From Saccostrea echinata (taxonomy: Eukaryota): a DNA stretch of 64,000 bases. Where the stretch lies: NCBI RefSeq assembly GCF_033153115.1, contig NW_026889764.1, forward strand, positions 4,464,001-4,528,000, written 5' to 3'. The notes beneath the pieces were generated by a model. The model was not told the origin of the DNA, made no database searches, and saw only the letters and a list, made by a program, of their open reading frames with translations. Positions 29,740 to 60,871 of this stretch are shown in pieces. The position numbers and the translations under genes were made by a program. Numbering within the stretch: the stretch's first letter is position 1; each line of letters begins with the position of its first letter.

Positions 29740-30383
29740 TTAACGTTTAAAGTGATGGAAAATTCCGCCACAAGATTCGAAGCATGGAGTTAAGCAACAG
29801 TTAATGCACAATGAATAGAGCCTCTGACAGACGCCGCAATTTATCTCCAACTCCTTAAAACAAGGCGTCAAAAACCAGACATGCCAAAAGGCGATGTAAG
29901 CAAATTCGCAACCCCACTCTGCAGCGATAAAGCAACCGCAACACAGCGTCAACAATTTATAGCAGCAACCTTTCCAAAACTCGAAGCATGAATTGGAGAG
30001 TTTGAAAACACAGTCGATACTGTGGGTACCATCGGGCTCACCAATGACGTCATTAAAAAGAAGAGTCTACAAAACAAATCGAATTTCATATATGCAAAAG
30101 ATTCAGAAATAAGTATTTCATAATATTTTTTATACATAATTTATCTTTATTCTAGCAATCTTCAATATCAAATTAGAATAAAATGTTAAATATGTGAAGG
30201 GCCAAGAATTATCATGAAAATAACTACAGGTCTTGTCTATATTATTTTCTTGTCAAATTTGACCACTGAATTTCGATACCCCCTATTATTCAAGACATGA
30301 TTCTGCCATAGATTTGGTAATCAAGTATAAAATTCCATGCTTAAGACTTTGTCCTGACCAAATTACACAATGACTGCTACTTA

Positions 30384-30420
<37 letters not shown>

Positions 30421-30598
30421 AGAAGAAGAAGAAGAAGAAGAAGAAAGGATTACGGTACTGTAAATCAACACAGACATTTTTTCGTCTGAGAGGGTTGAAA
30501 TACTTTTTGTCATTTTTTTTATAATCAAAAATTTAAAAAAAAAAGCATACCCCAAGATGGCTGTTTAGTCCATTAGGATCTCTGTTAACCAAATCCAT
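29740..30598 (-). CDS. Cys-rich short caveolin (cav-c), 124 aa; exons 30598-30551 and 30066-29740
   Basis: MDLVNRDPNGLNSHLG|GTATGC ... TTGTAG|TLLFNDVIGEPDGTHSIDC...GGIFHHFKR*; 16 Cys. Confidence 0.9.
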
Positions 30599-31751
30599 TT
30601 CTCCAGTTCTTTCCTACCTTCCTAAATCACAGAAGAGAAGTCTTCAGTTGAATCGAAAATCCGCCCCTCCCGATTCCTCATTGTTGGTGGTGGCTATAGC
30701 AATAATCAGTGTACAGAAATTTGGCAACATTATCGGACACTTTTATCTTTTAAATGTTAAAAGACGAAAATTTATGTCAATAATTGATAAGAATATGAAA
30801 CTCAAACTGGTTTGTTATAAATTACGTAAACATTATGTAAGACAATCCATACCTAATCATAACTCTATTAAATAATTTAGATTGCTTTGTGAATTTAAGT
30901 GGTAATCCAATTTATCTATAAATTATTGCACAGGAGGCCGACCACCTTCGTAAGTCCCCCGTCCCCTTTTTCCATTGAAGTAAAAAAAACTTTGCCTAGA
31001 TAAGGAAAATAAAACGTTCAAACAACCAATACTAGGAGAAAAATCACTTAAAATTATTTCCCTTGTCTCTTTAATCTGGGTTTGACCTTGAAATATCAAT
31101 AAAAATTGATAAACCTTTTAGTTTACTGCACCCATTAATACTATGCTACTCTTTGCTTAAAAGAGTTGATGTGGTTGAGATAGGAATATTGATATAGGTA
31201 TTAATTTATATATGCATCCGTAGAAGACGGCAAGAAAGAATATGAAAATTCAAAACTTGATATTCCTAAATGTTCCCTTTATTCTGAATTACCAAACTTC
31301 TTGAATAACAGTGTCAATGAATATTTTAAAGCGTTTAAAGTAATAATGCAAGTGACAACATCAGCTAAATGACAATGTCTTAGTACACGCGGTACGGGAA
31401 TCAGACCGACCTTGATAATCAAGTAAATTTTGTACTGATTACTATTGTTAATCAATTTTGGACACACAACTTGAAAGTATTTATCAAATGTACAAATTAA
31501 ACTATTTTGGAGGATTATTAATTATCTTCTCTACAATTCCTTTCTTTGAATGGAAGATAACCATACTATAAGAAATACACTTTAAAAAAGATATATAACA
31601 TTTGTTTTATTACAAATCAGAAACTGTATAATTATGCATTGTAAAAACTATAATTATCCACAAAGCACTGCCTGCACACGGAGTCAAAAGTTACAGAAAG
31701 TTTTGGATTCAGGATTAAACATTTATAACCAAAAATATTTGGGTTGTAGTT

Positions 31752-58676: not shown

Positions 58677-58810
58677 CAGGCCCGTGACGTTTTTATTGAG
58701 GGGGCACGAGCACACATTATCTATGTTTACTATAGTAATCTATAGATCGGCAAAATTATTGGGGGGGGGGGGCACGCCCCCCCCCCGTGCCCCCTGTTCC
58801 TACGGCCATG
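58677..58810. mobile_element. Short G/C-run non-autonomous DNA element (family of 9200-9470)
   Basis: CAGGCCCGT...TACGGCCATG ends; shared internal blocks with 9200-9470. Confidence 0.55.
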
Positions 58811-59719
58811 TGGTAGATTGATATTTTACTTCATTTCGCATGCATTGTTATTTTTCCATCTCTTGAACACAAATGATCTGCTATGCCACATGGAAATAAA
58901 ATGTTTCAAAGATTCATGTTCTGGATTTTATCCAGCTTACGATATTAAATGATTTAAAGGCAATTACTCCTCTTCAATTTTACACATTACTTTTTTATGT
59001 GATTTCTAGCTTTATTAAGAACGTTGAAAGACTTTTTTTCTTTGATTTCCTCAGTATATTTTCATACCCCCCCCCCCTTCCAAACCTTTTTTTTTTTTTG
59101 GTACAAGCCGCCCATTTCTGGATCCTGCATTCTGGATCCACCACTAATGTAAGAATGCATTAATTATACGTTTCATTTTTTTAAACAATAGCACTTTAAG
59201 AATCTAAAGTTCAACGGGGTCTGACAAGGACCCCCCCCCCCCCCCGACCTACAATTTCAACCACCAACCCCGTTGTATAGCTCTTTAGCAGTAGAGAAAA
59301 ATCTGCTGATTGCCCTGTGTAGATTTACATAAAAATTTATATTTCCCTAGAGGTGAATAAAAATCACTTTAACTTTCTTAATCCTTCTTCTTTAAATTGT
59401 AAACTCTCCGAATTACCATTACCATAAACGGCAACTTACAAAATCTTATAGGGTTTCATTAAAAATCCTTTTTTTCTCTCTCTATAAAAAAATCAAGACT
59501 AAACCACTGTAAAAACATTGTTTAATATAAACTGTTATATATTTTTTACAGCATTTTCCTGTATTTCTATGGTTATTTATAAAATCAGAATAAACTTTAG
59601 ATATCACAGTTGGTTTTAATATATAATTTAAAATATAAACAAAGGATCTGCTCAACAGAGCCATATATTATAAGTTCTTATGAAAAAGTCACTGTCCAAT
59701 TTATTTGATCATTTCTTCA

Positions 59720-60871
59720 TTAAGTTCTCTTAAAATGATGGAATATTCCACCCATTGATTCATAACAGGGTGTGCAACAGCAGTTGATACACATCGTGTA
59801 CATTCGTTGGCAAATTCCGCAATTAATCTCCACCACTTTGATACACGGTGTAAGCATCCAGATATGGAAAAAGGCGATGTACGCAAACTCGCAACCCCAC
59901 TCCATGGCGATACAGCAACCACAGCAAAAGGTCATCAATTTATAACAGAGGCCTTTCCAAAGCTCAAAGCAGGTGTTGGAGAGTTTGAAGACACAGTCGA
60001 TACTGTGGGTACCATCAGGTTCTCCGATGACGTCATTGAAGAGAAGTGTCTGAAAACAAAACAAAAAATATAGAATTTTCAGTCAAAAGGAAGGGAAATG
60101 TTGAAATTTTATACAATTGTTTTCACTTTACACAAGCACGTAGTAAAAGCGCGTAGTATTAAGGGGGGGGGGGGGGTCAAAACAAAATTTGCAGGTTTTT
60201 ACGATAGTCAAGATGTTTTCAAAATTGAAGAGATGCAACTTTTTGACTGGTTGTCTATAATCAACAAATTAGCATATTTTACGACGTCATTTCGGCGAGT
60301 TTAACCACGGTTGACGAGTGAAGGACGAGATAACCAATGGGAATCCGACGATGTACATATATATTAAAAATTATAACATGGTTCATGTCAAAAGTTGGAG
60401 AACTTAGCCCCCCACCCCTTTCCGCACAAGATATTATTTTCAAGTTTGGACAATTCTTCTTCTTTTTTTTAATTTCAGTTAATTTGTAAATTATTCTTCC
60501 CTCTTTCAAGAACGAATGCCTTCGACATGGATGTAGATCGTCTAAAATTATTCGATATTGCATTTCAATTTTTGTGCTATTTTACTTATATTTTATAGAC
60601 ATTTTTGTATAACATTTATATCCAAAAAAAAATTAGAAAGTGTTTAAAGGAAGAGTGAAAAGTGTAACTTGCGAGTGAAAATAGATATCTCTTCTCGTAT
60701 GTAAAATTGTAGGAAAGGGTGCAAAATAAAATTATATTTGCATATAATACATGTATGTATTCATGTCCAAACTTAAAAAAAAAAATATATGAAAAAACTT
60801 ACCCCAAGATGGGCATTTAGACCATTAGGGTCTCTGTTAACAAGATCAATAACTCCAGTTTTATCAGCCAT
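59720..60871 (-). CDS. Cys-rich short caveolin (cav-j), 132 aa; exons 60871-60803 and 60049-59720
   Basis: MADKTGVIDLVNRDPNGLNAHLG|GTAAGT ... TTTCAG|TLLFNDVIGEP...HHFKRT*. Confidence 0.93.

What the first reader, a model, noticed from the sequence alone, without database searches (positions are those of the whole stretch)
29740..60871. Array of eight atypical Cys-rich mini-caveolins that lack the C-terminal beta-strand
Seen: cav-c to cav-j encode 124-132 aa proteins with 16-17 Cys (12-13%), clustered as CCGC(C) and C-I-N-CC(C)-TPC. Their signature is F(N/D)DVIGEP, their intramembrane segment is GC(C/F)IAxEWGCEFAY (two Glu, no Pro), and they end GGIFHHFKR(T/G). Established: human CAV1 has three (palmitoylated) Cys and GIPMALIWGIYFA with Pro110, and ends FSNVRINLQKEI, the strand that builds the central beta-barrel of the 11-mer 8S disc. 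cav-a and cav-b in this window keep FSNIRI. Inference: these paralogs form a distinct caveolin class, possibly a barrel-less or open disc, heavily S-acylated, or a membrane-bound metal/redox-binding (Cys/His/Glu) scaffold. Eight intact copies suggest selection for dosage. Whether this class is already described cannot be judged from here.
Basis: partly seen in the sequence, partly recalled or inferred. Interest (0 to 1): 0.8.

Follow-up and report, generated by a model that had tools for sequence, protein, structure and literature searches.

The report
Oyster tandem array of short-tailed caveolins
Eight intact caveolin genes, at least two of them expressed, sit in a row in a rock-oyster genome and belong to an old mollusc-wide caveolin subfamily with a shortened, basic C-terminal tail, but their many cysteines are normal for mollusc caveolins and the tail is shortened rather than missing.

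Summary
Eight two-exon genes lie on the minus strand (29740-60871). All have GT-AG introns and encode 124-132 aa proteins with 16-17 Cys and every quoted motif. They are true caveolins: PF01146 E 1e-29 to 1e-32, and a gapless alignment to human CAV1 residues 46-169. The genome is Saccostrea echinata, and RefSeq already calls these genes "caveolin-1-like".

- Cys-richness and WGCEFA do not mark this group. The sister clade of mollusc caveolins with the normal FSxIxV tail has as many Cys (median 14 vs 15).
- The tail is shortened, not absent. HHFKRT aligns to CAV1 168-173, which leaves 4 of the 7 beta-strand positions.
- The short tail F-x-x-F-K-(K/R) defines one supported clade across bivalves and gastropods. 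The His pair is not conserved in it.
- "Eight" is a window effect. A ninth copy lies just past the window end, four more lie about 100 kb away, and contig C15 carries 22 of the genome's 28 caveolin hits within about 208 kb.

The copies are old and constrained: 22 synonymous vs 3 non-synonymous variable sites. Exon 2 is homogenised by gene conversion. Spliced transcripts exist for cav-c and cav-d. Whether a central barrel forms could not be tested here.

The parts
29740..30066 (-). cav-c exon 2 (108 aa plus stop; tail GGIFHHFKR)
   Evidence: ORF and AG acceptor. Pfam PF01146 E 5e-29. RNA-type contigs in runs X1 and X2 join 30066 to 30551.
30551..30598 (-). cav-c exon 1 (MDLVNRDPNGLNSHLG, short N-terminus; GT donor)
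   Evidence: The splice joint that skips 484 nt is seen in two runs from two studies.
31752..32081 (-). cav-d exon 2 (109 aa; tail GGIFHHFKRG)
   Evidence: The joint 32081 to 32758 is seen in run X1.
32758..32826 (-). cav-d exon 1 (MTDKTGEIDLVNRDPNGLNSHLG)
34716..35045 (-). cav-e exon 2 (109 aa; tail GGIFHHFKRT)
   Evidence: Contigs cover the exon only, up to 35046.
36215..36283 (-). cav-e exon 1
   Evidence: It is 92.8% identical to cav-d exon 1, although exon 2 of cav-e matches g, h and j instead.
38299..38628 (-). cav-f exon 2 (17 Cys; TCCCGCC)
   Evidence: The product equals the exon-2 part of RefSeq XP_061179131 (P0059).
40820..40885 (-). cav-f exon 1 (intron 2191 nt)
   Evidence: It matches the N-terminus of P0059.
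46432..46761 (-). cav-g exon 2
   Evidence: Its protein is identical to exon 2 of e and j but differs at 9-12 synonymous sites.
47826..47894 (-). cav-g exon 1 (MVDKTGVIDLEHRDPNELNSHLG)
   Evidence: It matches P0054, XP_061179132.
50947..51276 (-). cav-h exon 2
52896..52964 (-). cav-h exon 1
   Evidence: It matches P0053, XP_061179133.
55057..55386 (-). cav-i exon 2
56117..56185 (-). cav-i exon 1
   Evidence: The two exon products match P0001, XP_061179136.
59720..60049 (-). cav-j exon 2
60803..60871 (-). cav-j exon 1
   Evidence: It matches P0057, XP_061179137.
19173..19502 (-). Context: cav-b exon 2, which is Cys-rich (14 Cys) but has the canonical tail FFSNIRIEKK
   Evidence: It falls in the canonical mollusc clade, sister to the short-tail clade.
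4788..5150 (-). Context: cav-a last exon, CAV1-like, 6 Cys, tail IFSNIRIALKKET
   Evidence: Pfam E 5.7e-36. Used as the outgroup.

Best explanation
These are eight functional paralogs of a conserved mollusc subfamily of Type II caveolins. Type II caveolins have the pin motif, signature motif, scaffolding helix and spoke region, and all of these align without gaps to human CAV1 residues 46-169.

The subfamily is defined by a shortened, basic C-terminal tail, ...C-E-(A/S)-x-G-x-(L/I/V)-F-x-x-F-K-(K/R), followed by 0-3 further residues. The chain ends where the CAV1 beta-strand (residues 170-176) has only just begun.

Most likely mechanism (inferred, not shown): the proteins assemble like other caveolins into membrane-embedded oligomeric discs. 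The central hub would be at most a 3-4 residue stub ringed by Phe and Lys/Arg, plus His in oysters, rather than a full 7-residue barrel. The many Cys lie in a helical stripe. They include the equivalents of the CAV1 palmitoylation sites C133 and C156. I take them to be S-acylation sites or small hydrophobic surface residues. This trait is shared with canonical-tail mollusc caveolins.

The array is an old tandem expansion inside a 22-gene caveolin supercluster. It is kept by strong purifying selection, and exon 2 is homogenised by gene conversion. The result is several loci that encode the same or nearly the same protein, which fits selection for dosage or separate regulation of each copy.
For: Family membership:
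- PF01146 scores 101-111 bits over profile positions 25-129 of 133.
- phmmer against 7sc0 gives E 3e-30, with query 5-128 aligned to CAV1 46-169 without gaps. C133 and C156 are conserved.

The clade:
- The short-tail rows form one clade (support 98/89), sister to a canonical Cys-rich mollusc clade (97/85).
- Members occur in oysters, scallops, pearl oysters, mussels, Dreissena, Mya, Mercenaria, Ruditapes, Mactra, unionids, Babylonia and Nucella.
- The tail alignment covers 58 short-tail and 18 canonical proteins. Median Cys is 15 and 14 respectively.
- Cys positions show helical periodicity. The peak is at 95 degrees per residue, and 7 of 5000 shuffles reach it.

Constraint on the copies:
- dN/dS is 0-0.13 in every pair where dS could be estimated (all pairs with c or k are saturated). 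Copies e, g and j encode identical exon-2 proteins but differ at 9-12 synonymous sites.
- Among e, g, h, i and j there are 22 synonymous and 3 non-synonymous variable sites, binomial p 1.6e-11.

Gene conversion:
- Among e, g, h, i and j, exon 2 is 94-97% identical, exon 1 only 72-83%, and introns and flanks cannot be aligned.
- d and e share their intron (68.6%), upstream region (84.7%) and exon 1 (92.8%), yet their exon 2 is only 81.5% identical.

Expression: contigs cover exons only, and they remove the predicted introns of c (runs X1 and X2) and d (run X1) exactly, with GT..AG on the minus strand.

Supercluster: the genome has 28 caveolin hits, 22 of them within C15:4,432,496-4,640,776.

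Background from the literature:
- The CAV1 beta-strand is residues 170-176. Barrel-less caveolins still form discs (PMC12330381).
- CAV1 49-147 is enough for caveolae. The F160X truncation lacks the barrel but still supports caveolae (PMC10212548).
Against: - Disc assembly, acylation and the state of the hub are inferred only from homology.
- The AF2 monomers leave the tail as coil both for the short-tail protein and for a canonical control. They therefore say nothing about a barrel.
- Foldseek found no PDB match for the monomer model.
- The Cys stripe lies 10-110 degrees away from the hydrophobic moment of the other residues. It could face neighbouring protomers rather than lipid.
- The sequencing runs are only guessed to be RNA, and they are assembled contigs. 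Expression levels and per-copy expression of e to j are therefore unknown.
- A 4-residue strand could still form a short barrel.
Confidence: 0.7

Rival explanations
1. These are barrel-less, open-hub caveolins. The short tail cannot form the central parallel beta-barrel, so the proteins make less stable or more dynamic discs, like the atypical sponge caveolins or human CAV1 F160X. The conserved F-K-(K/R) end would instead bind anionic lipids at the centre of the disc.
For: - Only 3-4 residues lie beyond the position of CAV1 N169.
- The second inward-facing hydrophobic strand position (CAV1 I172, which is V or I in canonical mollusc tails) is Lys or Arg here.
- The tail has been conserved since before bivalves and gastropods split, so it is functional and not simply decayed.
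- There are precedents for discs without a barrel (PMC12330381; PMC10212548).
Against: - No oligomer model or experiment is available.
- The helix-to-tail boundary falls at the same position as in the canonical control.
- F170 is retained.
- The published AF2.2 oligomer set includes a class member, Dreissena XP_052250592.1. The main text reports 'similar results' for that set, but no detail can be read from the supplement.
Confidence: 0.35
2. The proteins are a membrane-bound metal- or redox-binding scaffold. CC, CxC and CCC clusters, the His pair and two Glu would coordinate Zn, Cu or Cd in oysters, which accumulate metals.
For: - 16-17 Cys per protein, with the motifs CCGCC and NCCCTPC.
- HH in the tail, and Glu at the CAV1 114 and 118 positions.
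- From my own knowledge, oysters accumulate Zn and Cu.
Against: - The same Cys load occurs in canonical-tail caveolins and in gastropods, unionids and Dreissena.
- The HH pair is not conserved in the class. S-A, G-A, H-K, H-N and I-H also occur.
- Glu at position 114 is variable: H, Q, Y, C and S also occur.
- The Cys sit with helical periodicity inside long hydrophobic, aromatic-rich helices. They are not in loops as in metallothioneins.
- Two of them match known CAV1 palmitoylation sites.
Confidence: 0.08
3. The eight copies are an assembly artefact, such as uncollapsed haplotypes or a mis-expanded repeat, or they are very recent neutral duplicates with no separate function.
For: Several copies encode identical or nearly identical proteins.
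Against: - Introns differ in length (484-2191 nt) and cannot be aligned between most copies. Flanks are also unalignable, and exon 1 is only 72-83% identical.
- Synonymous differences far outnumber non-synonymous ones, 22 to 3.
- Saccostrea cucullata has separate orthologs that pair with d, with f and with the e-j group.
- RefSeq models exist for at least five of the loci as separate genes.
Confidence: 0.02

Closest known systems
Human caveolin-1 (PDB 7sc0), a Type II caveolin
   Same: CAV1 residues 46-169 align without gaps (E 3e-30). This covers the pin motif (IDLxNRDP), the signature motif, the scaffolding helix, the spoke region, and Cys at positions 133 and 156.
   Different: - The first ~45 residues of CAV1 have no counterpart.
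- Pro110 is Cys, and Ile114 and Tyr118 are Glu.
- There are 16-17 Cys instead of 3.
- C143 is Val, with Cys at 141 and 144.
- The chain ends at the equivalent of N173, so only 4 of the 7 beta-strand residues (170-176) exist, and I172 is Arg.
Canonical-tail mollusc caveolins (cav-b in this window; neighbours in L005 and L006; Magallana gigas P0042; Solemya P0041; Pomacea P0102)
   Same: They have the same two-exon layout in this genome, 13-16 Cys at largely the same positions (83, 91, 99, 107, 117, 154, 155), WGCEFA, and a similar length. They are the sister clade.
   Different: - Their tail is F-S-x-I-x-(V/I)-x-x-x, 8-9 residues after the conserved Phe. The short-tail class has F-x-x-F-K-(K/R) with 5-6 residues.
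- Cys at positions 110, 141, 151 and 159 are enriched in the short-tail class, and Cys at 94, 98, 121, 129 and 166 in the canonical class.
Atypical sponge caveolins (Amphimedon queenslandica) and human CAV1 F160X
   Same: Both are caveolins with no functional C-terminal beta-strand. They still oligomerise into disc-like particles that lack the central density and are less stable (PMC12330381; PMC10212548). They are the functional analogy if the short tail cannot form a barrel.
   Different: The oyster proteins are Type II by sequence, with the pin motif present. They retain a conserved short tail rather than losing it. Their tail has been under long-term constraint, and it is not a disease truncation.
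Human caveolin-3
   Same: It is a short caveolin with more Cys than CAV1. The review counts 6 potential palmitoylation sites (PMC10212548). Several class members are annotated as 'caveolin-3-like'.
   Different: By my own knowledge, CAV3 keeps a full-length C-terminal strand region. The automatic 'caveolin-3-like' names do not show orthology.

Membership tests
Caveolin (Pfam PF01146) | Profile match above the curated gathering score | tested here: met
   Four array copies score 101-111 bits against a cut-off of 25, E 5e-29 to 4.5e-32, over profile positions 25-129 of 133.
Caveolin (Pfam PF01146) | Signature motif (FEDVIAEP in CAV1) followed by the scaffolding and intramembrane/spoke helices | tested here: met
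   F(N/D)DVIGEP is present. The alignment to CAV1 46-169 has no gaps. The AF2 monomer gives one long helical region, residues 38-127.
Caveolin (Pfam PF01146) | Assembly into a membrane-embedded oligomeric disc (8S-like complex) | not testable with these tools
Type II caveolins (Han et al. 2025) | Pin motif (CAV1 residues 49-60) | tested here: met
   (E/V)IDLxNRDPNGLN aligns to CAV1 IDLVNRDPKHLN. According to PMC12330381 the pin motif occurs only in Type II caveolins. cav-c keeps it in shortened form (MDLVNRDP...).
Type II caveolins (Han et al. 2025) | C-terminal beta-strand that builds the central barrel (CAV1 170-176) | tested here: inconclusive
   Only F-K-R-(T/G) occupies positions 170-173, and in cav-c only F-K-R. 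Monomer AF2 gives coil for both the short tail and the canonical control.
Atypical (barrel-less) caveolins, Amphimedon type | Membership of the clade that contains the A. queenslandica caveolins | not tested
   No sponge sequences were in the tree. The pin motif and the close sister relation to canonical mollusc caveolins argue against membership.
S-acylated caveolins | Cys at the CAV1 palmitoylation positions 133, 143 and 156 | tested here: inconclusive
   C133 and C156 are conserved. Position 143 is Val, flanked by Cys at 141 and 144. Acylation itself cannot be tested here.
Metallothionein-like metal binders | About 30% Cys in CxC/CC clusters, few or no aromatic residues, a small soluble protein | tested here: not met
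   Cys make up 12-13%. The sequence is rich in F, W and Y and sits in long hydrophobic helices. The same Cys pattern occurs in canonical caveolins.

The most novel reading that the evidence does not exclude
The short-tail clade is a naturally 'hub-modified' caveolin, conserved since before bivalves and gastropods split. Its discs would have no barrel, or a one-rung barrel, with a mouth ringed by about 11 copies of Phe plus Lys/Arg, and in oysters also two His. This would give a new central lipid-, sterol- or metal-interacting site and a multiply acylated membrane face. The expansion of the oyster array would reflect demand for this special membrane scaffold.
Probability: 0.15. Interest if true: 0.7.

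Novelty: new variant of a known kind. Interest (0 to 1): 0.42.

Why it matters
What the central beta-barrel of the caveolin disc does is an open question in the field. Disease truncations lacking it, and sponge caveolins predicted to lack it, still form discs. This work identifies a large, conserved and expressed mollusc clade in which evolution has cut the strand to 3-4 residues and fixed a basic F-K-(K/R) end. Canonical-tail paralogs sit in the same gene cluster. That gives matched natural pairs, such as cav-e against cav-b, for testing what the barrel contributes.

It also shows that heavy Cys loading is a general feature of mollusc caveolins. The reference comparative paper does not mention cysteine or palmitoylation.

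The array itself is a clear case of exon-limited concerted evolution combined with purifying selection. In practical terms the genes are ordinary members of a well-known family and are already annotated.

Tried and rejected
- **Foldseek, AF2 monomer against the PDB:** no match. A long curved all-helical monomer is a poor query. I did not follow up, because sequence homology to 7sc0 is already decisive.
- **AF2 monomers:** I modelled the short-tail protein and a canonical control. Both tails are coil, so this cannot tell barrel from no barrel.
- **Oligomer modelling:** not possible, because it would need a joined sequence.
- **Supplement of Han et al. 2025:** I looked for the oligomer model of the Dreissena class member. 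Only image placeholders are held.
- **Literature on bivalve caveolins:** there are only passing mentions, such as a hemocyte cluster marker in M. gigas, a larval shell-delay gene list and bathymodiolin bacteriocytes. None can be tied to this subclass, so I did not use them as evidence.
- **Earlier scan notes:** none mention caveolin.
- **Hydrophobic moment against Cys moment:** this did not settle which face of the helices carries the Cys.
- **The large representative-protein search:** not run. It returns no taxonomy and the family was not in doubt.
- **Assembly-artefact and young-neutral-duplicate readings:** rejected.
- **Dilysine ER-retrieval motif:** I considered KKXX and KXKXX. The spacing does not fit HHFKRT or FHHFKK.
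Full report
**How the searches were done**

Only the exon-2 translation, about 83% of each protein, was sent to search tools, and always by reference. Any full-length protein used (P0001 and others) is a database protein that a tool returned.

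**1.

Motif scans and stop-to-stop ORFs on the minus strand find eight copies of a 108-109 codon exon, TLLF(N/D)DVIGEP...GGIFHHFKR(T/G). Upstream of each lies a 16-23 codon exon, M(A/T/V)DKTG(E/V)IDLxNRDPNGLNSHLG.

Each exon 1 ends just before a GT. Each exon 2 starts just after a pyrimidine-rich tract and an AG, in phase 0. Introns are 484-2191 nt, and the proteins are 124, 131 or 132 aa. The coordinates given in the finding are exactly the stop codon of cav-c (29740) and the start codon of cav-j (60871).

Each protein has 16 Cys, or 17 in cav-f.

**2. What the genes are**

The exon-2 products score 101-111 bits on Pfam Caveolin (PF01146, cut-off 25), aligned to profile positions 25-129 of 133.

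The word-based protein search returned P0001, "caveolin-1-like [Saccostrea echinata]". It equals the two exon products of cav-i and lies on a contig of 16,472,332 bases. The own-genome search reports the same length for the contig that carries this window, C15. RefSeq already models at least cav-f, g, h, i and j as separate genes, XP_061179131, -32, -33, -36 and -37.

Against solved structures, P0001 residues 5-128 align without a gap to human CAV1 residues 46-169 (7sc0, E 3e-30). The aligned stretch covers:
- the pin motif (CAV1 49-60);
- the signature motif;
- the scaffolding helix;
- the whole spoke region;
- Cys at the CAV1 palmitoylation positions 133 and 156.

Position 143 is Val, with Cys at 141 and 144. 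According to Han et al. 2025 (PMC12330381) the pin motif occurs only in Type II caveolins, so these proteins are Type II.

**3. The tail is shortened, not absent**

Extending the gapless alignment to the C-terminus puts H127-H128-F129-K130-R131-T132 opposite CAV1 S168-N169-V170-R171-I172-N173. Han et al. define the CAV1 beta-strand as residues 170-176. So four strand positions exist (three in cav-c and in species that end FKK), and the I172 position is basic.

The number of residues after the conserved Phe (CAV1 F167) compares as follows:

| Protein | Residues after the conserved Phe |
|---|---|
| Short-tail class | 5-6 |
| Canonical mollusc tails | 8-9 |
| Human CAV1 | 11 |

AF2 monomers end the long helix at the same homologous residue in P0001 (helix 38-127, coil 128-132) and in a canonical control, P0042 (helix 38-126, coil 127-133). 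Monomer models therefore cannot decide whether a barrel forms. Oligomer modelling was not available.

**4. Cys-richness is not what sets the class apart**

Canonical-tail mollusc caveolins have 13-16 Cys and the same WGCEFA segment. Examples are cav-b, three neighbours in L005 and L006, M. gigas P0042, Solemya P0041, the unionid proteins P0096, P0097 and P0101, and Pomacea P0102.

Across 58 short-tail and 18 canonical proteins the median Cys count is 15 against 14. Cys at the CAV1-equivalent positions 83, 91, 99, 107, 117, 154 and 155 are shared by both groups.

The Cys indicator along the helical region has a peak at 95 degrees per residue, reached by 7 of 5000 shuffles. The Cys therefore form a stripe along the helices. 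Which face they occupy was not resolved. The stripe lies 10-110 degrees from the hydrophobic moment of the remaining residues.

**5. The short tail does define a real, old clade**

I built a maximum-likelihood tree of the exon-2 region (52 rows; IQ-TREE LG+C20; cav-a as outgroup). All short-tail proteins fall in one clade (support 98/89). It is sister to a canonical Cys-rich mollusc clade that includes cav-b (97/85).

The class is found in:
- Ostreidae, Pectinidae, Pteriidae and Mytilidae;
- Dreissena, Mya, Mercenaria, Ruditapes and Mactra;
- unionids (Potamilus, Sinanodonta);
- the gastropods Babylonia and Nucella.

The class-wide consensus is C-E-(A/S)-x-G-x-(L/I/V)-F-x-x-F-K-(K/R), followed by 0-3 residues. 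The two variable positions are H-H in oysters. Elsewhere they are S-A, G-A, H-K, H-N, H-Q, H-M or I-H. The His pair is therefore a lineage feature and not a class feature.

**6. The array and its evolution**

The own-genome search finds 28 caveolin exon-2 hits. Their layout is:
- 22 lie within C15:4,432,496-4,640,776.
- A ninth FHHFKRT copy lies 820 bp past the window end (L001 820-1146).
- Four more FHHFKRT copies lie in inverted orientation about 100 kb away. Three of them were read, in L002.
- Five canonical copies lie upstream of the window.
- Two IFHKF(K/Q)RN copies lie on contig C2.

Within the array, homology between copies is confined to the exons. Two patterns stand out:
- Among e, g, h, i and j, exon 2 is 94-97% identical, exon 1 only 72-83%, and introns and flanks cannot be aligned.
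- d and e share their intron (about 600 nt at 68.6%), upstream region (84.7%) and exon 1 (92.8%), but their exon 2 is only 81.5% identical.

This mosaic is the signature of gene conversion limited to exon 2.

Selection on the protein is strong. Copies e, g and j encode identical exon-2 products but differ at 9-12 synonymous sites. dN/dS is 0-0.13 in every pair where dS could be estimated; all pairs with c or k are saturated. Among e, g, h, i and j, 22 variable sites are synonymous and 3 are not (binomial p 1.6e-11).

Saccostrea cucullata has separate orthologs of d (P0061), of f (P0058) and of the e-j group (P0060). The array therefore predates that species split. It is not an assembly artefact.

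**7. Expression**

Three public runs hold small parts of 29700-35699. When laid on that stretch, their contigs cover exons only and have zero depth in introns and between genes. The one exception is a repeat at about 35100-35500.

The contigs join 30066 to 30551, skipping 484 nt (CT..AC on the plus strand, which is GT..AG on the minus strand). This joint is seen in runs X1 and X2, which come from two studies. They also join 32081 to 32758, skipping 676 nt, in run X1. These are exactly the predicted introns of cav-c and cav-d. Exon 2 of cav-e is also covered, up to its acceptor.

The runs are only "guessed" to be RNA, but exon-only coverage with precise intron removal shows that they are. Because the data are assembled contigs, expression levels and the separate expression of e to j cannot be read from them.

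**8. Comparison with the literature**

I found no paper that describes this subclass, its tail or the Cys load of mollusc caveolins.

Han et al. 2025 do not mention cysteine or palmitoylation. They do list a class member, Dreissena XP_052250592.1 (P0044, tail AVFHHFKK), in Data S1. They also modelled it with AF2.2, shown in Data S4 as images only.

The same paper reports that beta-strands are predicted absent from 60% of atypical caveolins. It also reports that the sponge protein forms less stable discs without central density. The review PMC10212548 states that CAV1 49-147 is enough for caveolae, and that F160X lacks the barrel yet still supports caveolae. Caveolin discs without a barrel are therefore an existing concept. 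A conserved Type II clade with a truncated, basic strand is not described.

**9. Verdict**

The interpretation needs narrowing. The distinctive, conserved feature is the short F-x-x-F-K-(K/R) tail. It is not the cysteines, the Glu residues or the His pair.

The most likely reading is a functional subfamily of Type II caveolins that forms discs with a reduced hub and a multiply acylated face. The oyster array is maintained by purifying selection and exon-2 gene conversion.

I class it as a new variant of a known kind, of moderate interest.

Noticed in passing
G000:C15:4,432,496-4,640,776 (the window is C15:4,464,001-4,528,000): A caveolin supercluster. 22 of the genome's 28 caveolin exon-2 hits lie within about 208 kb. 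They comprise five canonical Cys-rich copies on the plus strand upstream of the window, cav-a, cav-b, nine FHHFKRT copies on the minus strand, one LFIHFKP copy, one weak hit, and four inverted GSVFHHFKRT copies.
   Followed up: partly
window 31752-36283 (cav-d and cav-e) compared with cav-g to cav-j: Mosaic history. cav-e shares its intron, upstream region and exon 1 with cav-d, but its exon 2 is 96-97% identical to g, h and j and only 81.5% identical to d. This indicates gene conversion limited to exon 2.
   Followed up: yes
window about 35100-35500 (inside the cav-e intron); related copies at 37542-37800 (92%) and 48786-48938 (76%): A short interspersed repeat with very high summed contig depth in all three runs (up to about 37,000), with many different flanking sequences and internal deletions. 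It is probably an abundant transcribed SINE- or MITE-like element.
   Followed up: no
window plus-strand ORFs opposite each exon 2, for example 31767-32162, 34692-35093, 55072-55467 and 59807-60073: Open frames of 88-133 aa lie antisense to the caveolin exon 2 in most copies. They mirror the coding exon and have no independent support. They are most likely a by-product of the sense codon composition.
   Followed up: no
window 4788-5150 and 7210-7662, minus strand: cav-a is a CAV1-like paralog with only 6 Cys and a full-length tail (IFSNIRIALKKET). A large upstream ORF encodes a long Pro/Ser-rich N-terminal region that ends ...EDRDPTRMNDIVKV. This makes a long-N-terminus caveolin sit next to the short ones.
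   Followed up: partly
window 12162-12294: A run of 133 N (assembly gap or masked stretch).
   Followed up: no
L001 (C15:4,528,001-4,531,500): The ninth FHHFKRT copy (exon 2 at L001 820-1146, minus strand) groups with the Crassostrea and Magallana proteins P0003 and P0006 rather than with the window copies. Its exon 1 was not found within the 2.3 kb fetched upstream.
   Followed up: partly
window about 4449-4560 and 48067-48387: Simple repeats. A (CT/GA)n tract reads as SLSLSL, and a (TA)n-type tract reads as YIYIYI, in the ORF lists.
   Followed up: no
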